Shown: positions 5,966 through 51,112, counted from the first letter of the stretch. The stretch is 64,000 nucleotides of DNA from Anolis carolinensis (GCF_035594765.1 NC_085843.1:174259971-174323970), one strand, 5' to 3'. Numbers and translations: made by a program. Notes: generated by a model from the letters alone, not told the origin.

Positions 5966-8900
5966 ATCAAAATTAATATAAATCCTAGAGCGGTGATGGC
6001 AAACCTTTGCCCAAACCAGGGGGAGGGGGGTTGGACATTTGTGGATCTAAGCGGGGGGTCACAAGCAAGATGGCAGCAGGGTGGTGAGCAGGAAGGTGAC
6101 AAGTGGAGGTGGTGAGCAAGTGGGCAGGAAAGTGTATGAGTGGGTGGTGGGTGAGCATGTGTGGGCAAGTGAGTGGGTGAGTGGGCAAAAAAGAGAGCAC
6201 CGTATCCCCTTCTGGCACATGTGCATACACCACCACTGTATGTATGTAGCATTACATGGTGCCACACTACTTTCATTCCTTTTATCTTTCCCTCCTCTCA
6301 AATCTTTTATCTTTTCCTTTCTCTTCCTTCCCTCGTTTTTTTTCTTCCCACATTCTCCCTTCCTTCTTCCCGTCCCTTCATTCATATATCACATTTCTTT
6401 CCCAGCAATATCACAGAAGGGCATTTCACCTAGTAACAGCCAATCCAGTGGCATCACAGAGGATCACTTCACCTAGTAACAAATATGTCCAGGGCAGGTG
6501 GTCTATACAACCTGCCATTCATTCATTCATCCTTCCATCCATTCAAAGTGACTGCTGTTGAACACTGCCATTTCCTCATGTATTAGATAAGGTTGATATG
6601 ACGTGAGCCTAATATTCTCAGCAAGCTTTCTAAAGTCACTTCTCAGGGACCATGAAAATGAGAAGGATAAATTGGGAGAAGCTGAGGGTTCAGTGTTGGA
6701 ATAGGAAGACTGCATGGAATAGCAAGCAGCTGTGGCTTCAATCTGGCCGCAGTCAAATGGATGGGTATTTTGCTACATGTCAATAGTGTTCCTTATGAGT
6801 AGGTGGTATTTTTCAAAGAACTGTATGTTCCAATATTGGCAGTGTTCTTATGACTTCTAGATAACACAGTGTTTCAAGCAGCTCCATCATAAACAGGAAG
6901 TCAAATTAACAGGAACTCGTTAGCCTTGAGTTATGCCGCTCTTTATTGCAATATATTTTTAATTAGCATTTACAAGACAAGCTTATGAGATGTAGTGAAG
7001 CATGGGGCACCAAAGATAGGTGCTTATGGCATTCACTTCTGTCTGTTTGATAATTACAGTGATATATTGCACACTAAGCAGGTTATTAGAGACATTCAGA
7101 AGGGATATTATCTTCACTCTCCAGGAGGGAGTTTATTTTTGTATGTTGCTCAGAAGAAACATGCAAATATGTGATTACATATTTTACTGGCTTGGGGCAC
7201 AATCCACCACATCCTGCATATTTTAAACTGTCTCTTATTGAACAAAATCATTGATCCTTATTAGGTTCCTTGAAAAACTGCTATCAGTCTGAGGTCCTTT
7301 CCAGCCATGCTGTCTGAAATGCTTTGAAAGCATAGATGCTAAGGATTGAATTGAAGACACACCAAAAGCATTTCCCATACCACATACCAGACTCTTGGCA
7401 TAATCATGTGCAAGTCTCATTAACTCAGAATGGTCTGTGTAGGGTTAGGGAAACAGACACTCACTTTTTGTGAGCATTATCTGTTTCTTGCAGATGATTT
7501 TTTGTGTGCAAAAACCCCCAAAACAAAACAAAGAAACCCACATATCAACAAATCTTGCAATGGATAATTCCTGAAAAGTGTTCAGAAACTATAATTTTCA
7601 AAATCTTTCTCACAGTGGAATGAAAATTGGCACAAGTATTTGTTGTTTCCTTTCAGAACAAACTAGCTGAGCATTCTGTCAGATAGAAAAGCTCAGCTTA
7701 ATGTCCTCTGTTTTGCATGAGGACATTATAGCCAGAGAGGGAAAAATGGAGATGTCCAGATATTGTCTAGTACAGCAGGTATAACTTGAAGCAGCATCTT
7801 TCATAACACCTAGCTTCAGGAGAGGAGTAGAATTTTTGGACATTTTTTTTGAGGATACCAGTGAGGGTTCTGTGTGTTTTCCTTCATGTATTTTTTTTTA
7901 TCCCAAACTATGATAGTATAATTCTGTGGAGAAAAATTGGTTTTTTTAAAATACAAAATCTGTTTTCTACACAGAAAATGTTCAATCAGCCATTTTCTGC
8001 ATAGATAATAGGTTCTCTGTAAAACGTTTTCGTACACAGATTCATTTGTGACACAAGGAATGTGGATTCTGGAGGGAATATTACAGATTATATTCAACAT
8101 TGGGGAAACTGAATAAACAATTGTAGATAATTATGAATAAACATGTTGGAACAGGCAGGTGTAAAATGCACACACATTTCAAAGAAAACAAAACAAAATC
8201 AGAACAAAACTAGAATCAAACCAAGGTTGGGATGGGAAACCAGGTGGAATATTTAATATTGCAATAGATTCAGGGATGCCAGATATCAGAGTCTAACTCT
8301 GAGTCTCCAGCTTTCCTGGGTCTTCTCTAGACAAAAGACAAGGCTATAATTCTAGAACTATTCTCAGGATGAAGGGGTGGGCTGTTTGTAGATTAACTGT
8401 AAAGTTTAATTGATTTGTTGTTACCACTTGTAAAGACTCTGGGGGTGAAGAAGATCAATATATTTCTTTATTTAGTTTCTTTCCCAGTCAGTACTGTGCC
8501 AGGGCTCAGTCTCTACTTCTCTTTAGCTTGACATTCAAGCTATAAGCAAATAGGCTAGATTAAATGTTCCTGATCCCATTTCTCTAAATAGGTGAGAATG
8601 CATCATCCTCCTTCATTTCATCCCTTTAAGCTAAGATTTCTGTCTTGATGTCCAAAGAGGATTTATGTATGTGTCTGTGAGCAACCATGGCTGATAATTA
8701 ATACAAAAGGTTTTACAATATCATCAGGGGTCATCCTTGGGTCTCAGGTTCTGGCCCTGAAATGTCACGACCTTGGATAATTCTCCAAAACCTAAACAGA
8801 AGGGAACAGGGAGTTTTTCACATTCCTACTCCAGCTTTGGTCTTATGAAATAATTCAAAGATTTCCTCCTCTTCATGTCAGTTAGATAAAAAGGCCTACA

Positions 8901-12912: not shown

Positions 12913-13564
12913 GGGTCCTTCCAGACAGACCTTTAAATCACAACCTGTCTCATGAATTAATGTGAAGTAAACAGGTTTTACCAGTTTGCTCCGCATTAAT
13001 TAAAGACCTCAATTAATCTGGGCCTTCCTGAAAGGTCTGGGTTTGTTGAGGTGCTGGGTCTGTGGGGGCGGACTACTGGGACTGCTTCTACAGCCCCGGG
13101 GGTCATTCCCCACAGCCATCCTACTTTTTCAGACTTCAAAAAGCCTGGAAGAGTGAGATGGCCCCACCCTCTCTTCTCCAGCCCCTCATTTGGGCCTCAA
13201 AACCTACAGGAGAGGCTTGATAGCAGTGTGGTCCTTTCCTTACAGTCCTCCTGGAGCAAGAAAATGGCACATCAGGAGGGTGGAGGGATTTCCCTCTTCT
13301 CCCTTTCTGATGCATCATTTTCTTGCACCAGGAGAAGTGTAGGCAGGGGCCTATGCTGATGACAGGCCTCTCCCATAAGTTTTGCAGTCCAAATGGGGGA
13401 TGAGGGTGGTGGTGGATGGCATCCCGGATCAACCTTTGGTTGATCCAGAATGCCATGTAGCCACCTCCCAAAGGAAAGCCCATGATTTGGGGACACCAAA
13501 CCGAGTGGACGCAGGTTATTTTAACCTATTTCCGTTTGGTTTTTCCTTATGTCTGGAAGTGCTC
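12913..13564. mobile_element. PIF/Harbinger-like non-autonomous element
   Basis: TIR gggtccttccagaca/tgtctggaagtgctc; 3-bp TSD tca/tca. Confidence 0.7.
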
Positions 13565-42400: not shown

Positions 42401-43435
42401 ATGCAACAAAAGCAAACCATTCCCATCACATGCACCAGCTGTGGCATGTTCCGCTTTTTCACACAAAAACTAGACAACTACATCTGCTCCAAATGCAAAC
42501 AGATGACTCTGATGGAGCAGAGGATCCAACAGCTCGAGCACCGTATTAAGACCCTTAAGGACATTCAGGCACTCGAGCTCTTCTTGGACACTGCACAACA
42601 CGCTGCTGTAGATCAGCAGCCTGCATCACACCAACACCACCAAGACCATGATCAGGAACCTTATGGGGAGATCAACTCAAAGGTAGACAACCCTCAGGCT
42701 TGGAAGGAGGTCACCCATAGAAGGAGACGCAGGACCAGGCAGCCTCCGCAGAACTCCTCTGCTCAGCTGCATTTACACAACAGATTTGAAATTCTTACAT
42801 CATTAACATACAATCAGGAAACACATCTTGTGGAGGACCACAGTTTCTTAGATACTACTCAGTGGACCACCCTGGATCAATGCGCAGGGGATAGCCCTGA
42901 CGGGGACAGTGCATCACCACAGTCACACTTATGTAATCATGCAAATGCTCCATCCCCAATCATAGACCAGGAGCAACAGGAACATCCTTGGGAGAGTAAT
43001 GGGCTCTCGGATGTATCTCAATGGATTGTCATTGATGAATGCACTGGGGATGTTGAGGAGGAGGACAACACTTTACACCTACATGATTCACTTCAACAGG
43101 AACACTCTTCAGGGGACATACACACTGTCTTGCACAAAAGGGACCCTGTCAATCCTCAAAGGAAACAGGTCTTGGTAGTAGGTGACTCCCTCCTTAGAGG
43201 AACGGAAGCCATCATTTCCAGACCGGATGGGATGGCTCGAGAAACATGCTGCCTCCCGGGGGCAAAAATACACCATATCACTCAGAGGCTCAGCAGGCTC
43301 CTAAAGCCCCATCACCCTCCCCACCTTATGTTGATACATGTAGGTAACAATGACACCGCTAGGCATACTTTTCAAAAGATCACAAATGATTTTCGAGCTC
43401 TGGGAACAAAGCCAAAACTGTATAATGTACATGTG
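42401..43435 (+). pseudogene. CR1 ORF1 N-terminal part (zinc finger/leucine zipper + SGNH esterase blocks I-III)
   Basis: CTSC..CSKC, heptad LMEQRIQQLEHRIKTL, VVGDSLLRG, CLPGAKI, IHVGNND; the track ORF runs 9 extra codons into the LTR. Confidence 0.92.
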
Positions 43436-43737
43436 TGTCAGCTCACCACAGCCGCTCCTGAATGAACACACGAGACTCTCTGTGATATCACCAGAAACTT
43501 TACTGCAGGAAACATAAACATCAGAAAAGCCAAGAATGGGAGACTCCGGCCAACCATCCTTTATATACCCTCCCCCTCATTTGAAAAGTCTCTTCCCGCT
43601 CAGTAAAACCCCGCGCAAATTCCCCGCCAAGTCCAGCAGCCGTTTCTTCTCTGAGTCCTGAGACGCAGGTGTCTTATCAATGTCAGTGACCCTGAAACTC
43701 AGAGCCACATACAGGCTCTAGTAGCAGGGTTCTGACA
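43436..43737 (-). repeat. Gypsy 3' LTR
   Basis: Identical to 47642-47943 except 43652 T vs 47858 C. Confidence 0.97.
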
Positions 43738-43743
43738 TGGCGT

Positions 43744-43756
43744 CCTCCTCCCCTTC
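43744..43756 (-). other. Polypurine tract
   Basis: Minus strand GAAGGGGAGGAGG, 6 nt upstream of the 3' LTR. Confidence 0.85.
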
Positions 43757-43759
43757 GTC

Positions 43760-46700
43760 CTGGAAGGAAAAGATTAAACACAACTATTGTTCTCCGCTGT
43801 CCAGAGTTCCTTTATACTTTTTTAACAGGCTGCAATGGAATACCGGGTGTACCTTTCCTAGGTCCTTGGGTAGCCTCAGCTCATAGGTCACTTCGTTTAT
43901 TCTTTTCGCTACCCTGAACGGCCCTATATAGCGTGGAGCCAATTTCTTAGATGGGAACCCCAATTTCAGGTTTTTTGTGCTCAGCCAAACCAGATCTCCT
44001 TCGCCCAATTTGTCCCCCTCTCGGCGCCTACGATCTGCAAAGAGCTTGTACTTCTTTTGTGTTTCCCGCAATGCCTCCACCACGGTCTGCCACCCTTGCT
44101 TAATTTTGGCCGGCCATTCCTTGTCGGTCTGGCCCTCTCCTTCCTTCCACTCGGGTAGCCTGGGGAAAGGTGCCACCTCCTGTCCGTATACTATTTCGAA
44201 TGGGGCACGACCTGTGGCCGAATGTACGGCCCCGTTAAAAGCCATCTCAGCAAACGGAAGAAGGTCCGCCCAATCGTCCTGTCTATAATTGGTGTACATC
44301 CTCAAGAATTGGCACAGTGTCTGTTGGGTACGTTCGACCCCCCCGTTGGTTGCGGGGTGAAAAGCCGAGCTCAGATTCCTTTCCGCTCCTAACAGCTGTA
44401 AGAATTTTCCCCAAAATTTTGCAGTGAATTGGACTCCCCGGTCGCTAATTATTTTGTCGGGACACCCATGTAGGCGATATACATGCTTCACATACAAATC
44501 AGCGAGCTTTTCAGCCGAGGGGAGTTTTGGCAGGGCCACAAAGTGTGCCTGTTTTGAGAATAGGTCCAATATTGTCCAAATGTATCTGTGGCCTCTGCTG
44601 GGGGGTAGTTCGCCTACAAAATCCATTGCCACGCATTCCCATGGCCTCATGGGCTCCACCACCTTCTGCAATAGCCCCTGGGGCTTCCCAGGTGGTGTTT
44701 TTCCCTCTGCACATAATTCACACTGCGTGACGTACCCCCTGGCGTCTTTCCTCATTCCGGGCCACCAGCATTGTTTGGCCAACAGTTTAATAGTCCTGGT
44801 GGGGCCTAGATGACCTGCACCCTTGTTATCGTGGCACTTCCTTAACATTTCTTGTCTTAAACATTCAGGAATATACAATTTCTTATTTAGAAACACCAAA
44901 TCCCCACACTTTTCTCCCTGTTCTTTGTTCGTTTGTAACCATTTGTCCATTCCATATGCTCGCTTCAACTCTTCCTCCCATATTTCTCCTCCCCCCGTGG
45001 AAATGGCAGTACGTTTGTTTTCTTTGGCCGCTTGTGCTCGAGTCAGTACTGCCAGGCCCCATTGCTTATCTAGGAAAAGGCTCCCCTCAGATTCCTGAAT
45101 TCCTCCCCCGTGCTGAGGCATCCGAGAGAGAGCGTCAGCGAGTATGTTGTGTTTCCCCTGGAAGAACTTGAGTCTGAAATCAAAACGGCTGAAATATTGG
45201 GCCCATCTAATCTGCTTCGCTGATAGTTTACGAAGGGATCTTAGATACTGTAAATTTCTATGATCAGTCCACACCTCAAACGGTGTTCCACTTCCTTCCA
45301 GAAAGTGTCTCCAGCACTCTAGTGCTTTCAGAATCGCTAAGGCTTCTCTCTCCCAAATCGGCCAGTTTTTTTCTGTATCGCTAAACTTTTTCGACAGATA
45401 GCCACATGGCTTCAGGTTCCCCCCCTCGTCTTTCTGCAGCAGAACTGCCCCATATGCCCGGTCTGACGCATCGCAATGTAGTACAAAGGCCTTCGACATA
45501 TCAGGGTGCTGTAGGACAGGCTCCTCAGTAAAACGCTTTTTAAGGGCTTCGAAAGCTTCCTGGCATTCTATTGTCCAGGTCAGTTTGGCCCCTGGGGCCT
45601 TCACTTTGGCTGTTTCTCCCCTGCCTTTAGTCTTTAACAAATCCGTCAACGGCAAAGTGAGGCGCGCAAAGTCCTTGATAAATGTTCTATAGAAGTTTGC
45701 GAACCCCAGGAAGGATTGCAGCTGCTTCCGTGTTCTGGGGGCTTCCCACCCCCTCATGTCTTCCACCTTCGCAGGGTCCATCGCCACTCCCTGGGAGGAA
45801 ATCCTATACCCCAGAAAGTCTATCTGGTCTTTATTGAACTCGCACTTGGCAAGCTTCGCATACAGCTTCGCTTCCCTCAACTTTTGTAGGACTTCCCTGA
45901 CTAGTTCTACGTGTTGCTCCTTAGTCCGAGACATTATCAATATGTCATCTAAAAAAATAAAGACTCCCTTGTACAATAATGGATGCAACACTTTGTTGAT
46001 TAATTGCATGAACACGGCCCCTCCCCCGCATAAACCGAATGGGAGCACACAATAATTGAATAATCCGAAGGCGCAGGAGAAGGCCGTCTTCCACCTGTCC
46101 TCTGGTTTGATCTGCAATTTATGGTAAGCCTCAATTAAATCCAATTTAGTGAATATCTGTCCCTCCGATAACTGGGCGATCAAGTCCTTCACTAAGGGTA
46201 GGGGGTATTTATTTACAGTACTGATTGCATTCAGGCCCCTGTAGTCAATGCAGAGCCTCAGCGTTTGGTCCTTTTTTCGCCTAAACAACACAGGTGCCCC
46301 TAAAGGGGAGTTCGAAGGTTCTATGAAACCCCTCGCTAGGTTTTTATCAATGTACTTTCTCAGTTCCTCCTTTTCCCTAGCCGACATCGGGTATATCTTT
46401 GCCTTGGGAAGCTCTGCTCCTGGGACTAGCTCTATTTTCACTTCAACTCTCCGCTTCGGTGGGAAATTGTCTGCTTCCTTCTCGTCAAACACGTCCACAA
46501 AATCCCGATACTCTGGGGGTAATTTATCTGCCAGTTCTGCTATTCTGATAGAGTCTTCCTCCCCCCTTTTCCCCAGCTCCCTCTCAACTTCCTGGCTCCC
46601 TTCTTCCAAATTCATCCCGAAAATCATGCTCTTATCCTCCCAGTTGATTTGCGGGTTGGCCTGCCCCAGCCACGGCATGCCTAGTATAACATTATAGCTG

Positions 46701-46987
46701 GCTATTTGTGATATCACAAATGACACCTTTCCTTCCCAACTCCCTATCTTACACTTTACATCTTCGGCACTGTACCTAGCTAACGATCCTGATGCTGTGG
46801 ATCCGTCCAACTGCGAAAATGCTATTGGGGATTCTAGGTTCGTTCTTTCGCATCCCAATCCCTCGGCTAATTCAGGGGAAATGATGTTCCTGGAACATCC
46901 ACAATCCACAAACGCTTTGCAAGTTGCTTGTTTGCTGCCATTTTCAAGCTGAATGGGGACCACTATCATAGCTTTGTTCTGACTTAC
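43760..46987 (-). other. Predicted intron spanning the whole pol region
   Basis: Donor TTG|GTAAGT at 46987; acceptor TTTAATCTTTTCCTTCCAG|G at 43760. Confidence 0.7.
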
Positions 46988-47593
46988 CAACCCCCCCGAA
47001 TGGTGCCTCATCGGTGTTTCTTCCTCGGCGCGTTTTCCTGCCACAGCTCTTGGTTTGGGCTGGCCTCCGCTTTCCCCTTTTCTCTGCCAGCACTCGGCAG
47101 CTCTGTGGCCCAACCGGCCGCACACAAAGCAGCCACTCCTGCTGGCGCTCACGTTCCCTGTCGGCTCCGCTCTCCTCCCGGCTGGGGCTGATCCCTCCTT
47201 CCGGCTCCCCTCTTTCATCTGCGGCCGTTGCTGTAGCGCTCCTCGGTGCCTCCTCGCCTGGGCCAGCGATGTCTCGACGCGCCCCGCCAGCTGAATCCAT
47301 CCGCGCAGTGTGTCAGGCTCATCACGATGCACCGCCCAGGAGAGGATCTCCATCGCCGACATCCTCTCCTCCAGAAACACCATCCTTTGTGGGCCTGGGG
47401 AAGGTGAACCTTCCTCTCCTCCGGTGCTATCTCCCCGCACCACTCCACGCCTCTGGGTTACCCCATTTGGCTGGGCATAAGCGGTGGATGACGCCAGGGC
47501 CGCCAGCTGGTGGAACTCAGCGTCCGGCTCGGGAGTGGCCCTTCCCGACCTTCCTCCTCCTGCGACCAAGAGCTCTTCATCCTCCACTTGCAT
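43784..47593 (-). CDS. Gypsy Gag-Pol polyprotein, 1269 aa from the first ATG downstream of the 5' LTR (Gag apparently internally deleted)
   Basis: CCHC knuckle CFVCGRLGHRAAEC; protease FVDCGC..ILGMPWL; RT LCIDYRGLN, LPFGL, FLDDILI; RNase H CDAS..EREALA..TDH..ADALSR; integrase HHCC, MDFV/SDRG/GGVER, GPF module; no stops. Confidence 0.93.
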   Translation of the reverse strand: MQVEDEELLVAGGGRSGRATPEPDAEFHQLAALASSTAYAQPNGVTQRRGVVRGDSTGGEEGSPSPGPQRMVFLEERMSAMEILSWAVHRDEPDTLRGWIQLAGRVETSLAQARRHRGALQQRPQMKEGSRKEGSAPAGRRAEPTGNVSASRSGCFVCGRLGHRAAECWQRKGESGGQPKPRAVAGKRAEEETPMRHHSGGLVSQNKAMIVVPIQLENGSKQATCKAFVDCGCSRNIISPELAEGLGCERTNLESPIAFSQLDGSTASGSLARYSAEDVKCKIGSWEGKVSFVISQIASYNVILGMPWLGQANPQINWEDKSMIFGMNLEEGSQEVERELGKRGEEDSIRIAELADKLPPEYRDFVDVFDEKEADNFPPKRRVEVKIELVPGAELPKAKIYPMSAREKEELRKYIDKNLARGFIEPSNSPLGAPVLFRRKKDQTLRLCIDYRGLNAISTVNKYPLPLVKDLIAQLSEGQIFTKLDLIEAYHKLQIKPEDRWKTAFSCAFGLFNYCVLPFGLCGGGAVFMQLINKVLHPLLYKGVFIFLDDILIMSRTKEQHVELVREVLQKLREAKLYAKLAKCEFNKDQIDFLGYRISSQGVAMDPAKVEDMRGWEAPRTRKQLQSFLGFANFYRTFIKDFARLTLPLTDLLKTKGRGETAKVKAPGAKLTWTIECQEAFEALKKRFTEEPVLQHPDMSKAFVLHCDASDRAYGAVLLQKDEGGNLKPCGYLSKKFSDTEKNWPIWEREALAILKALECWRHFLEGSGTPFEVWTDHRNLQYLRSLRKLSAKQIRWAQYFSRFDFRLKFFQGKHNILADALSRMPQHGGGIQESEGSLFLDKQWGLAVLTRAQAAKENKRTAISTGGGEIWEEELKRAYGMDKWLQTNKEQGEKCGDLVFLNKKLYIPECLRQEMLRKCHDNKGAGHLGPTRTIKLLAKQCWWPGMRKDARGYVTQCELCAEGKTPPGKPQGLLQKVVEPMRPWECVAMDFVGELPPSRGHRYIWTILDLFSKQAHFVALPKLPSAEKLADLYVKHVYRLHGCPDKIISDRGVQFTAKFWGKFLQLLGAERNLSSAFHPATNGGVERTQQTLCQFLRMYTNYRQDDWADLLPFAEMAFNGAVHSATGRAPFEIVYGQEVAPFPRLPEWKEGEGQTDKEWPAKIKQGWQTVVEALRETQKKYKLFADRRRREGDKLGEGDLVWLSTKNLKLGFPSKKLAPRYIGPFRVAKRINEVTYELRLPKDLGKVHPVFHCSLLKKYKGTLDSGEQ

Positions 47594-47629
47594 GTTACAC
47601 CTCACCGCTACAGCGGGATGGTGTCTATT

Positions 47630-47639
47630 TTCTTGGCTT
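47630..47639 (-). other. Self-priming-type primer binding site
   Basis: Minus strand AAGCCAAGAA 2 nt after the 5' LTR; no TGG; complementary to TTCTTGGCTT at 47742-47733. Confidence 0.8.
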
Positions 47640-47641
47640 AG

Positions 47642-47943
47642 TGTCAGCTCACCACAGCCGCTCCTGAATGAACACACGAGACTCTCTGTGATATCACCAG
47701 AAACTTTACTGCAGGAAACATAAACATCAGAAAAGCCAAGAATGGGAGACTCCGGCCAACCATCCTTTATATACCCTCCCCCTCATTTGAAAAGTCTCTT
47801 CCCGCTCAGTAAAACCCCGCGCAAATTCCCCGCCAAGTCCAGCAGCCGTTTCTTCTCCGAGTCCTGAGACGCAGGTGTCTTATCAATGTCAGTGACCCTG
47901 AAACTCAGAGCCACATACAGGCTCTAGTAGCAGGGTTCTGACA
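47642..47943 (-). repeat. Gypsy 5' LTR
   Basis: 302 bp, TG..CA; upstream of gag on the minus strand. Confidence 0.97.
47740..47773 (-). promoter_or_regulatory. LTR core promoter: TATA box and initiator
   Basis: TATATAAA at 47773-47766; Inr-like CCATTCT with A at 47743, 30 nt downstream; AGTAAA polyA variant ~35 nt further. Confidence 0.75.
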
Positions 47944-47949
47944 CATGTG

Positions 47950-48215: not shown

Positions 48216-51112
48216 GTGAACAATATATTACCCACGACCACAGGGAACCGCCGAAAGGCTAAACGGAGGGCTGCACAAACACAGCAAGGACCAAGTACAG
48301 AGAGCACAATAATCCCAAATAAACAGTTCGAGAGGAGGTCACAGGGGCTTACATGTCTTTACACTAATGCTCAGAGCATGGGAAATAAGCAAGACGAACT
48401 CCAACTCCTAGCACAGCACCACACATACGATGTCATAGGCATCACTGAAACCTGGTGGGATGACTCCCATCACTGGAATTTAACCATTGAGGGCTATAAC
48501 CTCTTTCACAGAAATAGAACAAAGGGGAGAGGAGGGGGAGTAGCTTTATATGTCAAAAACAGTTACGTTGCAGAAGAAATGCAAGACTGTAATCCGGGAA
48601 ACCATCTTGAAAGCATCTGGATAAGAATCAAGGGAACCGGGACTCAAAAAGATCTTGTCGTGGGTGTCTACTACAGACCTCCGAGTCAGGATGAAGGACT
48701 TGATGAAGCCTTCTGTCAACAGCTGACCAAACAGGCACAAAGAAGAGATATAGTAGTCATGGGCGATTTCAATTATCCCGATATCTGCTGGAAAACAAAC
48801 TCAGCCAAGAGTACAAAGTCCAACAAATTCCTCACTTGCCTTGCAGATAATTTTATGGTCCAGAAGGTAGAAGAGGCAACAAGGGGATCAGCAACTCTTG
48901 ATCTAATCTTAACAAATGTGGAAGACCTGATCAATACAGTTGAAGTGGTTGGATCCTTAGGGGCAAGTGACCATGTGCTCCTGCAGTTTGCAATACAAAG
49001 GAATGCTGAAACTAAGACAAGTCAAACATGCTTTCTGGACTTTAAGAGAGCTGACTTCCAAAAAATGAAGGAATTACTGAGCGGCATTCCATGGACGCCG
49101 ATATTAAAAAACAAGGGAGTTAAGGATGGATGGGAGTTTTTCAAAAGTGAAATACTCACGGCGCAAATGCAAACAGTGCCAACAAAGAAGAAAAATAAGA
49201 CAAGTGCAAAGAAGCCAGAATGGATGTCCAAAGAACTTCTAACTGAGCTAAAGCTCAAAAGTGACATGCACAAGAAGTGGAAAAGGGGAGAAATCACCAA
49301 AGAAGAATTCAAACGTATAGCCAACACCTGTAGGGAAAAGGTTCGCAAGGCTAAAGCGCAAAATGAGCTCAGGCTTGCCAGGGACATAAAAAACAACAAA
49401 AAAGGCTTTTTTGCTTACGTTGGTAGAAAAAGGAAGAAAAAGGAGGCGATAGGGCCATTGCAAGGAGAAGATGGGGTGATGGCGACAGGGGACAGGGAAA
49501 AGGCAGAACTGCTCAATACCTTCTTTGCCTCGGTCTTCTCAGAAAAAGAAAGCCATCTTCAACCTCAGCAACACGGAATGGACGAAGGATTGGGGGAAAT
49601 CCAACCCCAAATAGGGAGACACGTTGTCCAGGAACACCTGGCCTCTCTAAACGAATTCAAGTCCCCAGGGCCAGATCAGCTACACCCAAGAGTACTGAAG
49701 GAACTAGCGGAAGTTATTTCAGAACCACTGGCAATTATCTTCGAGAGTTCTTGGAGAACGGGAGAAGTCCCAGCAGATTGGAGGAGGGCGAATGTGGTCC
49801 CTATCTTCAAGAAGGGAAAAAAGAACGACCCAAACAATTACCGTCCGGTCAGCCTCACATCAATACCAGGCAAAATTCTGGAAAAGATCATTAAGGAAGT
49901 GGTCTGCGAACACTTAGAAACAAATGCGGTCATTGCTAATAGTCAACACGGATTTACCAAAAACAAGTCATGCCAGACTAATCTGATCTCTTTTTTCGAT
50001 AGAGTTACGAGTTGGGTCGATACAGGGAATGCTGTGGATGTAGCGTACCTGGATTTCAGTAAGGCCTTCGACAAAGTCCCCCACGACCTTCTGGCAAACA
50101 AACTAGTAAAATGTGGGCTAGACAAAACTACGGTTAGGTGGATCTGTAATTGGCTAAGCGAACAAACCCAAAGGGTGCTCACCAATGCGTCGTCTTCATC
50201 ATGGAAAGAAGTGACAAGTGGAGTGCCGCAGGGCTCCGTCCTGGGCCCGGTTCTGTTCAACATCTTTATTAACGACTTAGACGAAGGGTTAGAAGGCACG
50301 ATCATCAAGTTTGCAGACGACACAAAACTGGGAGGGATAGCTAACACTCCAGAAGACAGGAGCAGAATTCAAAACGATCTTGACAGACTAGAGAGATGGG
50401 CCGAAACTAACAAAATGAAGTTCAACAGGGACAAATGCAAGATACTTCACTTCGGCAGAAAAAATGGAAATCAAAGATACAGAATGGGGGACGCCTGGCT
50501 TGACAGCAGTGTGTGCAAAAAAGACCTTGGAGTCCTCGTGGACAACAAGTTAAACATGAGCCAACAATGTGATGCGGCTGCTAAAAAAGCCAATGGGATT
50601 CTGGCCTGCATCAATAGGGGAATAGCGTCTAGATCCAGGAAGTTATGCTCCCCCTCTATTCTGCCTTAGTCAGACCACACCTGGAATACTGTGTCCAATT
50701 TTGGGCACCACAGTTGAAGGGAGATGTTGACAAACTGGAAAGCGTCCAGAGGAGGGCGACTAAAATGATTAAGGGTCTGGAGAACAAGCCCTATGAGGAG
50801 CGGCTTAAAGAGCTGGGCATGTTTAGCCTGCAGAAGAGAAGGCTGAGAGGAGACATGATAGCCATGTACAAATACGTGAAGGGAAGTCATAGGGAAGAGG
50901 GAGCAAGCTTGTTTTCTGCTGCCCTGCAGACTAGGACACGGAACAATGGCTTCAAACTACAGGAAAGGAGATTCCACTTGAACATCAGGAAGAACTTCCT
51001 CACTGTGAGAGCTGTTCGACAGTGGAACTCTCTCCCCGGGGCCGTGGTGGAGGCTCCTTCCTTGGAGGCTTTTAAGCACAGGCTGGATGGCCATCTGTCG
51101 GGGGTGCTTTGA
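48216..51112 (+). pseudogene. CR1 ORF2 (APE endonuclease + reverse transcriptase) with one frameshift near 50640
   Basis: YTNAQS, ITETWW, GDFN, LDLIL, SDH; NYRPVSLTS, YLDFSKAFD, GVPQGSVLGP, KFADD; frame changes at agatccagga|agttatgctc (ORFs 48216-50669 and 50645-51112); start codon uncertain. Confidence 0.95.

What the first reader, a model, noticed from the sequence alone, without database searches (positions are those of the whole stretch)
43718..46990. Gypsy element whose entire pol region looks like a spliceosomal intron: splice-controlled Gag expression yielding a still-mobilisable RNA
Seen: on the element (minus) strand a consensus donor TTG|GTAAGT lies at 46987, exactly between the Gag CCHC region and the protease, at a codon boundary. 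The 24 nt after the pol stop (43784) contain a branch-point-like TTTAAT, a polypyrimidine tract and CAG|G (acceptor at 43760). Joining them removes 3228 nt (PR, RT, RH, IN) and gives an in-frame Gag ending ..HHSGGL|DEGEEDAMSEPCY*, read through the PPT with the stop at 43720-43718 inside the 3' LTR. Established: single-ORF elements need excess Gag; Drosophila copia and Arabidopsis EVD (Ty1/copia) use spliced subgenomic RNA, whereas Ty3/Gypsy elements typically use frameshifting or, in Tf1, Pol degradation. Inference: this vertebrate sushi-like Gypsy sets its Gag:Pol ratio by splicing. Because the acceptor is just upstream of the PPT, the spliced RNA keeps R-U5, PBS, PPT and U3-R and could be reverse-transcribed into gag-only daughter elements. 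I cannot confirm whether this is already published.
Basis: partly seen in the sequence, partly recalled or inferred. Interest (0 to 1): 0.9.

Follow-up and report, generated by a model that had tools for sequence, protein, structure and literature searches.

The report
Lizard Gypsy element splices out pol
A young Gypsy-type jumping gene of the green anole carries strong, conserved splice signals that cut out all its enzyme genes as one 3.2-kb intron, leaving an mRNA for the coat protein (Gag) alone; this trick was described so far for copia-type elements of flies and plants, not for vertebrate Gypsy elements.

Summary
On the minus strand, TTG|GTAAGT (intron starts 46987) and a pyrimidine tract plus CAG|G (intron ends 43760) bound a 3228-nt, in-frame intron. 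It holds PR, RT, RNase H and IN.

Support for use:
- At least 11 NCBI RefSeq proteins of Anolis carolinensis end with the predicted junction, ..HHSGGL|DEGEEDAMSEPCY.
- All three such loci I fetched carry the 3228-nt GT..AG intron in DNA.
- The same layout recurs in two more A. carolinensis families, in A. sagrei, and in Crotalus and Vipera elements.
- The donor is the best-scoring GT in all seven Anolis copies, and it is kept although synonymous sites between families are saturated.
- A frameshift-type gecko relative lacks both signals.

Limits:
- No RNA reads could be laid, so splicing in vivo rests on annotation and conservation.
- No gag-only DNA copy was seen.
- This copy has an in-frame 807-nt gag deletion that removes the capsid domain, so its own spliced product would not be a working Gag.

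I found no paper describing this for a vertebrate Gypsy element. The scan noted the same feature on other copies in this genome (s1-517347, followed up; s1-552479; s1-546631).

Verdict: new variant of a known kind (copia/EVD-type splicing in Ty3/Gypsy). Confidence 0.7; interest 0.65.

The parts
47944..47949 (-). Target-site duplication, 5' side (CACATG; or 5-bp ACATG if the extra C at 43435 belongs to the LTR)
   Evidence: the same hexamer flanks both LTRs. Copies L001 and L002 have 5-6 bp duplications.
47642..47943 (-). 5' LTR, 302 nt, TGTCAG...CTGACA, with a TATA-like GGTATATAAAGG and AGTAAA
   Evidence: it differs from the 3' LTR at 1 position, so the insertion is young.
46988..47593 (-). 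Exon 1 coding part: truncated Gag (202 codons from ATG 47593), ending ..HHSGGL. CCHC knuckle at 47131-47090. In-frame 807-nt deletion junction at 47351-47347.
   Evidence: translation. (deletion relative to L001/L002; loose ends in all four runs). (the lost part is Retrotrans_gag/Ty3_capsid). (CCHC).
46982..46990 (-). 5' splice site TTG|GTAAGT (intron starts at 46987), at a codon boundary (Leu | Val-Ser)
   Evidence: Ranked 1st of 254 GT. The same site is used in NCBI models at L001, L002 and L012.
43760..46987 (-). 3228-nt intron = whole pol. PR 46939-46616, RT 46279-45800, RNase H 45577-45182, IN 44872-44354, SH3 43999-43811, pol stop 43786-43784.
   Evidence: domains. (the ORF is open across the donor and stops 24 nt before the acceptor).
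43760..43783 (-). 3' splice region: branch-point-like TTTAAT (43778-43773), pyrimidine tract (16 of 20 Y), CAG| (last intron base 43760)
   Evidence: Ranked 2nd of 437 AG. Pyrimidine content.
43718..43759 (-). Exon 2 coding part: 13 codons (DEGEEDAMSEPCY) plus TAG. It is read through the polypurine tract (43756-43743) into U3.
   Evidence: The tail is identical to the C-terminus of RefSeq proteins P0003 and P0006-P0013.
43436..43737 (-). 3' LTR, 302 nt
43430..43435 (-). Target-site duplication, 3' side (CACATG)

Best explanation
The element is a young Ty3/Gypsy (PEG10/sushi-like) LTR retrotransposon of Anolis carolinensis with one continuous gag-pol frame.

Proposed mechanism: its full-length transcript has two fates.
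- Unspliced, it is genomic RNA and the mRNA for the Gag-Pol polyprotein.
- Spliced from the strong donor just after the zinc knuckle to the acceptor 24 nt after the pol stop, it loses PR-RT-RH-IN. It becomes a short mRNA whose frame runs on through the polypurine tract and stops in U3. The product is Gag with a short acidic tail.

This gives the excess of Gag over Pol that single-frame elements need, as in Drosophila copia, Arabidopsis EVD and barley BARE.

Shown: the signals, their strength, their conservation, and annotated spliced gene models at many copies.

Inferred: that the splice happens in vivo at a useful rate, and that its role is Gag dosage.

This particular copy keeps the splice signals but has lost the capsid part of gag. 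It is a deletion derivative, not a source of working Gag.
For: (1) The exact junction peptide exists in RefSeq. P0001 and P0003 end ..HHSGGL|DEGEEDAMS(E/G)PCY, and 11 family-A LOC models do so in all.

(2) Their gene ranges hold one 3228-nt GT..AG intron at the same donor and acceptor: L001 6694-9921, L002 4204-7431, L012 2581-5808. The gag-pol ORF is open across the donor in L001 and L002 (not examined for L012), so skipping pol is not forced by a broken frame.

(3) The same layout appears in other elements:
- family B (L003/L004, 3215 nt, TTG or CTG|GTGAGT);
- family C (L005, 3222 nt);
- A. sagrei (L007, 3191 nt);
- Crotalus adamanteus (L009, ATG|GTGAGT, acceptor 23 nt after the pol stop);
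- Vipera latastei (L010, TTG|GTAAGT).
The snake records carry submitter-type protein accessions (KAK/KAM), not RefSeq XP numbers.

(4) The donor ranks 1st of about 180-250 GT in all 7 Anolis copies. The acceptor ranks 1st to 4th of about 430-480 AG.

(5) Between the four Anolis families, synonymous sites are near saturation. Third-position identity is 0.29-0.43, and only 18 of 187 invariant-residue columns keep the codon. Yet TTG / GTR / AGT is kept. Ser is AGT and position -1 is G in all lineages, including the snakes.

(6) The distance from acceptor to LTR is 22, 22, 25 and 52 nt, always 1 mod 3. All four families therefore read ..ATG TCA.. across the PPT/LTR border as an acidic tail.

(7) Control: the gecko relative L011 uses an in-phase G_GGA_AAC -1 frameshift site. 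Its pol ORF runs through the PPT into the LTR. It has neither a donor at the gag/PR border nor a pyrimidine tract plus AG before the PPT.
Against: No spliced RNA was seen directly. The look-up of sequencing runs gave no run on record as RNA. The four runs laid were short Logan contigs with even cover that look like DNA, and they list no joint 43759/46988.

The evidence behind the NCBI and submitter models (RNA-seq or ab initio) cannot be read with these tools. A gene finder would pick strong sites even if cells rarely use them.

Val-Ser at the start of PR is also conserved as protein, including in a frameshift-type contig (L006), so part of the donor's conservation could be a protease-site constraint.

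A T-rich stretch before a PPT is known from retroviruses (own knowledge), so the pyrimidine tract may serve reverse transcription as well.

The Gag:Pol role is by analogy only.
Confidence: 0.7

Rival explanations
1. Prediction artefact. The two sites are good-looking motifs that gene finders join, but cells do not splice there at a meaningful rate. Their conservation would come from other constraints: a Leu|Val-Ser protease cleavage site, and a T-rich box that helps PPT priming.
For: Val-Ser encoded by GTGAGT also stands at the homologous place in a frameshift-type contig that already has its own gag stop (L006). The collection's clusters of these proteins hold only NCBI/UniRef members and no assembled-transcript member.
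Against: The codon-level pattern goes beyond protein constraint. Ser is always AGT out of six possible codons, position -1 is always G, and +3 is always a purine, while neighbouring synonymous sites are saturated. The donor and acceptor occur together or not at all. The exon-2 phase is kept in four families. Models start at different Met codons, and one is a host-TE chimera (P0017); both fit transcript-based models (inference).
Confidence: 0.13
2. The splice is real, but its main role is not Gag dosage. The tailed Gag could be a distinct isoform: a regulator of assembly, a dominant-negative or restriction-like product, or an aid to RNA export as with Cer1's spliced product CERV. Alternatively the splice could be a host-imposed dead end that lowers genomic RNA.
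For: The acidic tail and its reading phase are conserved in four Anolis families, which hints at a function of the tail itself. Cer1, a single-frame Gypsy element of C. elegans, uses a spliced mRNA for a non-Gag protein (PMC3315495).
Against: In the snakes the tail is only 5-6 residues and not acidic, so the shared feature is 'Gag ends soon after the junction', as in copia and EVD (PMC5580714). A host-imposed dead end would not be kept by young, successful families with intact frames.
Confidence: 0.15
3. The spliced RNA, which keeps R-U5, leader, PPT and U3-R, is packaged and reverse-transcribed. That would seed LTR-gag-LTR daughter elements.
For: By anatomy, all cis parts lie outside the intron. 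In the DNA-like run X1 the summed contig depth over gag and the LTR is 2-3 times that over pol. The tool warns that such depths cannot rank parts of a gene.
Against: No contig with the joint 43759/46988 is listed in any of four runs, although joints with depth as low as 30-40 are listed. Three of three family-A loci looked up keep the intron in DNA. There is no other copy in the window.
Confidence: 0.12

Closest known systems
Drosophila copia 2-kb spliced gag mRNA; Arabidopsis EVD shGAG; barley BARE (Ty1/Copia)
   Same: All have a single gag-pol frame. A canonical intron removes pol (copia: about 3 kb) or the protease region, so that translation ends just after Gag. The splice sites are conserved among relatives (PMC5580714; PMC3735527; PMC12786077).
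   Different: Those elements belong to another superfamily (Ty1/Copia, with IN before RT) and live in fly and plant hosts. EVD couples splicing to premature polyadenylation, so its short RNA lacks the 3' LTR. Here the acceptor sits at the edge of the PPT, and the tail is read through the PPT into U3, so the short RNA would keep both ends. PMC5580714 found no conserved splicing in Arabidopsis Ty3/Gypsy elements.
Cer1 of C. elegans (Ty3/Gypsy, single gag-pol frame) with a spliced 2.4-kb mRNA
   Same: It is a Gypsy-type element whose full-length RNA must skip consensus splice sites. Its spliced product shares N-terminal Gag sequence (PMC3315495).
   Different: The Cer1 splice has several introns and makes a new protein (CERV) needed for export of the genomic RNA. 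It does not make a complete Gag.
PEG10 / frameshift-type sushi-like elements (-1 frameshift at G_GGA_AAC)
   Same: They have a related Gag; NCBI names some of these lizard proteins 'retrotransposon-derived protein PEG10'. The gecko relative L011 has the PEG10-type heptamer in phase.
   Different: The window element has no gag stop and no overlapping frames, so frameshifting is not available to it. PMC11011659 notes that an anole element used as a proxy for the PEG10 ancestor (Gypsy-15_Ano) lacks a frameshift, but does not say how it makes Gag.
Ogre elements of legumes (Ty3/Gypsy with an intron)
   Same: A Gypsy element with a functional spliceosomal intron (cited in PMC12786077).
   Different: In Ogre the intron interrupts pol and must be removed to restore the pol frame (own knowledge). 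Here removal deletes pol.
Schizosaccharomyces pombe Tf1 (single-frame Gypsy; excess Gag by Pol degradation)
   Same: Same problem (one frame, need for excess Gag). Its integrase shares the C-terminal SH3_Tf2-1 domain family.
   Different: Tf1 solves it after translation (own knowledge; not tested here).

Membership tests
Ty3/Gypsy (Metaviridae) LTR retrotransposon | Two LTRs with TG..CA ends and a target-site duplication | tested here: met
   302-nt LTRs, TGTCAG..CTGACA, 1 mismatch. CACATG flanks both ends.
Ty3/Gypsy (Metaviridae) LTR retrotransposon | Domain order PR-RT-RNase H-IN | tested here: met
   Pfam hits in that order, E-values 1e-5 to 1e-35.
Ty3/Gypsy (Metaviridae) LTR retrotransposon | Gag with a capsid domain and a CCHC knuckle | tested here: inconclusive
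   The CCHC knuckle is present. The capsid domain is absent from this copy because of an in-frame 807-nt deletion, but it is present in sister copies (P0003: Retrotrans_gag, Ty3_capsid).
Ty3/Gypsy (Metaviridae) LTR retrotransposon | Polypurine tract next to the 3' LTR, and a primer-binding site after the 5' LTR | tested here: inconclusive
   A purine run lies at 43756-43743, 5 nt before the LTR. The primer site was not analysed; another note of the scan proposes self-priming.
Splice-made Gag-only mRNA strategy (copia / EVD / BARE type) | Single gag-pol frame without a frameshift or stop between gag and pol | tested here: met
   One ORF, 47677-43784. It is open across the donor in 5 of 7 Anolis copies.
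Splice-made Gag-only mRNA strategy (copia / EVD / BARE type) | A canonical GT..AG intron whose removal ends the frame shortly after Gag | tested here: met
   3228 nt, with a stop 13 codons after the junction.
Splice-made Gag-only mRNA strategy (copia / EVD / BARE type) | Splice sites conserved in position among diverged relatives | tested here: met
   Four Anolis families and two snake elements. Absent in the frameshift-type gecko element.
Splice-made Gag-only mRNA strategy (copia / EVD / BARE type) | Spliced RNA observed in cells | not testable with these tools
   Only annotated gene models were available. No RNA run was offered, and the contigs laid show no joint.
Splice-made Gag-only mRNA strategy (copia / EVD / BARE type) | The spliced mRNA supplies most of the Gag protein | not testable with these tools
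   This needs protein or ribosome-profiling data.
Programmed -1 frameshift gag/pol (PEG10, Ty3-like) | Overlapping gag and pol frames with an in-phase slippery heptamer | tested here: not met
   The window element has a single frame. The feature is met in relatives L008/L011 (G_GGA_AAC) and L006 (U_UUA_AAC).

The most novel reading that the evidence does not exclude
The donor lies after gag and the acceptor lies before the PPT, so the spliced RNA keeps every cis signal for packaging and reverse transcription. It could therefore occasionally be copied back into the genome as LTR-gag-LTR units. That would be a ready-made route by which vertebrate genomes acquire stand-alone, promoter-equipped gag genes, the raw material of PEG10/RTL/PNMA-type domestications. 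It would also make splicing, rather than deletion, the origin of gag-only copies.
Probability: 0.12. Interest if true: 0.85.

Novelty: new variant of a known kind. Interest (0 to 1): 0.65.

Why it matters
How single-frame Ty3/Gypsy elements obtain excess Gag is settled only for a few cases (Tf1: Pol degradation). For the many single-frame Gypsy elements of vertebrates it is not addressed in the papers I could search.

A conserved pol-spanning intron in squamate elements would show that the copia/EVD solution arose, or was kept, in a second superfamily and in vertebrates. It would explain anole elements that lack the PEG10-type frameshift. It would also explain dozens of 'uncharacterized protein' and 'PEG10' gene models in lizard and snake annotations, which are really spliced transposon Gag.

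It raises testable questions: how unspliced RNA with a near-consensus donor escapes splicing and nuclear retention, and whether spliced RNA can seed gag-only copies.

Tried and rejected
- **RNA reads.** The look-up of sequencing runs listed no run on record as RNA. I laid three 'RNA?' guesses plus the best DNA holder. All were 90-170-nt Logan contigs with cover across the whole element, so they look like DNA. They say nothing on splicing, and no joint 43759/46988 was listed. This is no evidence against splicing.
- **Joined model.** I searched exon 1 by reference and then used natural RefSeq proteins returned by the tools.
- **Gag-only DNA copies.** None in the window. None among three family-A loci. 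None in the listed joints (17 more joints were not shown).
- **Assembled-transcript proteins with the tail.** The clusters hold only NCBI/UniRef members. The one Logan protein with a similar-looking tail (P0035) turned out to be an ordinary gag ORF of a frameshift-type element.
- **Vipera model (L010).** It is a messy multi-exon chain over several elements. Only its last intron was used.
- **Literature.** Eight searches (one search failed on a term) found splice-made Gag only for Ty1/Copia. For Gypsy elements they found Cer1 and Ogre. Subscription journals are not covered, so absence is not proof.
- **Chance explanation.** Rejected for the reasons given under the best explanation.
- **Consensus.** Copies were only compared.


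Full report
**1. What is in the window**

On the minus strand lies a complete LTR retrotransposon.
- The LTRs are 302 nt long (47943-47642 and 43737-43436) with ends TGTCAG..CTGACA. They differ at one position.
- The hexamer CACATG flanks both ends.
- One frame runs from 47677 to the TAG at 43786-43784; the first ATG is at 47593.
- Pfam finds PR, RT, RNase H, the integrase zinc and core domains, and the Tf2-type SH3 domain, in Gypsy order.
- The host is Anolis carolinensis, because the closest proteins and loci are from assembly GCA_035594765.1.
- The element sits inside a LINE: the plus-strand ORF 48216-50669 has APE and RT domains.

**2. The observation**

- The donor is TTG|GTAAGT, with the intron starting at 46987. 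It lies at a codon boundary, 33 codons after the end of the CCHC knuckle (47131-47090), and upstream of the protease.
- The 24 nt after the pol stop contain TTTAAT, a tract that is 16/20 pyrimidine, and CAG|G. The intron ends at 43760.
- The intron is 3228 nt and in frame.
- Exon 2 reads DEGEEDAMSEPCY through the purine run 43756-43743 and stops at 43720-43718 in U3.

**3. A correction for this copy**

In all four runs laid, contigs break at 47347/47351 and continue with other sequence. Sister copies L001 and L002 carry 807 nt more there. The deletion is in frame, has a GGAGA microhomology, and removes the Retrotrans_gag/Ty3_capsid part (P0003 residues about 13-281). The window copy is therefore a deletion derivative. 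Its spliced product would be a 215-residue protein without a capsid domain. The splice signals themselves are intact and identical to those of sister copies.

**4. Independent support for the intron**

I searched exon 1 by reference and then the natural hit P0001.
- These searches returned RefSeq proteins of A. carolinensis that end exactly with the predicted junction..HHSGGL|DEGEEDAMS(E/G)PCY.
- Cluster listings show 11 such LOC models in this family.
- For P0001, P0003 and P0009 the gene range exceeds the coding length by 3228 nt. Exon mapping puts one GT..AG intron at the same donor and acceptor: L001 6694-9921, L002 4204-7431, L012 2581-5808.
- In L001 and L002 the gag-pol frame is open across the donor (1592-1596 codons), so the models do not skip pol because it is broken.
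- Whether RNA-seq introns underlie these models cannot be read here. I consider it likely (inference), because the models end in a 13-codon exon inside an LTR, start at various Met codons, and include a host-transposon chimera (P0017).

**5. Conservation**

The same layout is annotated in several other elements.

| Element | Locus | Intron | Donor |
|---|---|---|---|
| A. carolinensis family B | L003/L004 | 3215 nt | TTG or CTG\|GTGAGT |
| A. carolinensis family C | L005 | 3222 nt | TTG\|GTGAGT |
| A. sagrei | L007 | 3191 nt | TTG\|GTGAGT |
| Crotalus adamanteus | L009 | 2244 nt | ATG\|GTGAGT |
| Vipera latastei | L010 | not mapped | TTG\|GTAAGT |

- In the Anolis elements and in Crotalus the acceptor lies 23-24 nt after the pol stop. 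In Vipera a longer pyrimidine tract precedes AAG|.
- The two snake proteins carry submitter-type accessions (KAK/KAM) rather than RefSeq XP numbers.
- In all seven Anolis copies the donor ranks first. The acceptor ranks first to fourth.
- The four Anolis families are 55-71% identical in protein over gag-PR. At residues identical in a pair, third positions agree only 29-43% of the time. Only 18 of 187 columns invariant in all four keep the same codon, and for Leu it is 1 of 21.
- Against that background the donor codons are TTG / GTA or GTG / AGT in all four families.
- In every lineage, snakes included, Ser is AGT and the base before the junction is G.
- The stretch from acceptor to LTR is 22, 22, 25 and 52 nt, always 1 mod 3. 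All four families therefore read ..ATG TCA.. across the PPT/LTR border and get a Glu/Asp-rich tail. This is weak evidence, since it rests on two indel events, but it fits a segment that is translated only after splicing.

**6. A control**

Related Gag proteins of the gecko Paroedura picta come from a two-frame element (L008/L011). Its LTRs are at 7438-7931 and 13003-13496.
- It has the PEG10-type heptamer G_GGA_AAC in phase, 15 nt before the gag stop.
- Its pol frame runs through the PPT into the LTR.
- It has no strong donor at the gag/pol border and no pyrimidine tract plus AG before the PPT.

So the two signals go together with the single-frame design and are not general features of this clade.

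One caveat: a Logan contig (L006) of a frameshift-type element (in-phase U_UUA_AAC) also has GTG|GTGAGT at the homologous Val-Ser, about 30 residues before the protease active site. Part of the conservation may therefore be a protein constraint, or that element may use both means.

**7. What could not be shown**

- No run on record as RNA was offered.
- The contigs laid look like DNA and list no joint between 43759 and 46988.
- So splicing in vivo, its rate, and its effect on the Gag:Pol ratio remain inferred.
There is no junction contig, 3 of 3 loci keep the intron, and there is no second copy in the window.
- The higher summed depth over gag and the LTR in run X1 is unexplained. The tool says such depths cannot be interpreted.

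**8. Mechanism proposed**

One primary transcript starts in the 5' LTR (inferred from the TATA-like box).
- Unspliced, it serves as genomic RNA and as the Gag-Pol mRNA.
- Spliced, it carries the Gag frame, 13 extra codons and a stop in the last exon, so nonsense-mediated decay is not expected (inference from established rules).

The share of transcripts spliced would set the Gag:Pol ratio. This works like copia, EVD and BARE (PMC5580714, PMC3735527). Unlike EVD, the short RNA would keep the 3' LTR.

**9. Comparison and novelty**

- Splice-made Gag is documented for Ty1/Copia elements.
- PMC5580714 found no conserved splicing in Arabidopsis Gypsy elements.
- Among Gypsy elements, Cer1 splices to make a different protein, and Ogre splices to restore pol.
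- PMC11011659 notes an anole Gypsy without a frameshift but gives no mechanism.
- I found no paper on this feature in vertebrate Gypsy elements. The searchable library lacks most subscription journals.
- I class it as a new variant of a known kind.
- The scan has noted the same feature on other copies of this genome (s1-517347, with a follow-up that reached the same reading; s1-552479; s1-546631). I re-derived its claims myself, including the snake case.

- The joined junction was not sent to any search.
- Broken copies (L005, L007 pol; the window gag) are only described.

Noticed in passing
window 47347-47351 (minus strand): This copy has an in-frame 807-nt deletion in gag with a GGAGA microhomology. 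It removes the capsid domain that sister copies keep. The LTRs are 301/302 identical, so either a deleted RNA was mobilised in trans or the deletion is very recent.
   Followed up: yes
window 48216-50669 (+) and 42401-43465 (+): The Gypsy element is nested in a LINE. The downstream plus-strand ORF has APE and RT domains. The upstream 354-codon ORF has no Pfam hit and runs 30 nt into the Gypsy LTR; it may be the LINE's ORF1.
   Followed up: partly
L011 7438-13496 (Paroedura picta): A young frameshift-type relative: 494-nt LTRs 99.8% identical, GGTAC duplication, PEG10-type G_GGA_AAC in phase, and a pol frame that reads through the PPT into the LTR. It is a useful contrast to the splice-type elements.
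   Followed up: yes
L006 1503-1580 (Logan contig of SRR28863755): This element has an in-phase U_UUA_AAC before its gag stop. It also has GTG|GTGAGT at the Val-Ser that is the donor in the anole and snake elements. It may combine frameshifting and splicing, or Val-Ser may be a protease-site constraint.
   Followed up: partly
protein P0017 (XP_062816526, 'aspartoacylase isoform X1'): A 578-residue RefSeq model named after a host gene ends with the family-B spliced Gag tail. It is probably a host-transposon chimeric or mis-merged model.
   Followed up: no
window 46950-47640 and 43400-43825 versus 43826-46949, run X1: Summed contig depth over gag and the LTR is 2-3 times that over pol, and it steps near the donor and acceptor bins, yet no junction contig is listed. 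This could reflect deletion derivatives, cross-mapping of related families, or gag-only copies. The tool says such depths are not interpretable.
   Followed up: no
protein P0014 (UniProt A0A803THA0, 967 aa): An older model of the same family runs from the LTR through gag into integrase. It then ends with ..LLLEPGCGSEFQGH, which is the start of the LTR read in another frame. That suggests a deleted copy or another junction.
   Followed up: no
window 47594-47641: The sequence after the 5' LTR (CTAAGCCAAGAAAATAGACACC..) does not look like a usual tRNA primer site. Another first-stage note (s1-539946) proposes Tf1-like self-priming. I did not test this.
   Followed up: no
window 43435; L001 and L002 LTR ends: Target-site duplications read as 6 bp (window, L002) or 5 bp (L001). 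The window's 3' LTR may carry one extra C copied from the base after U5.
   Followed up: partly
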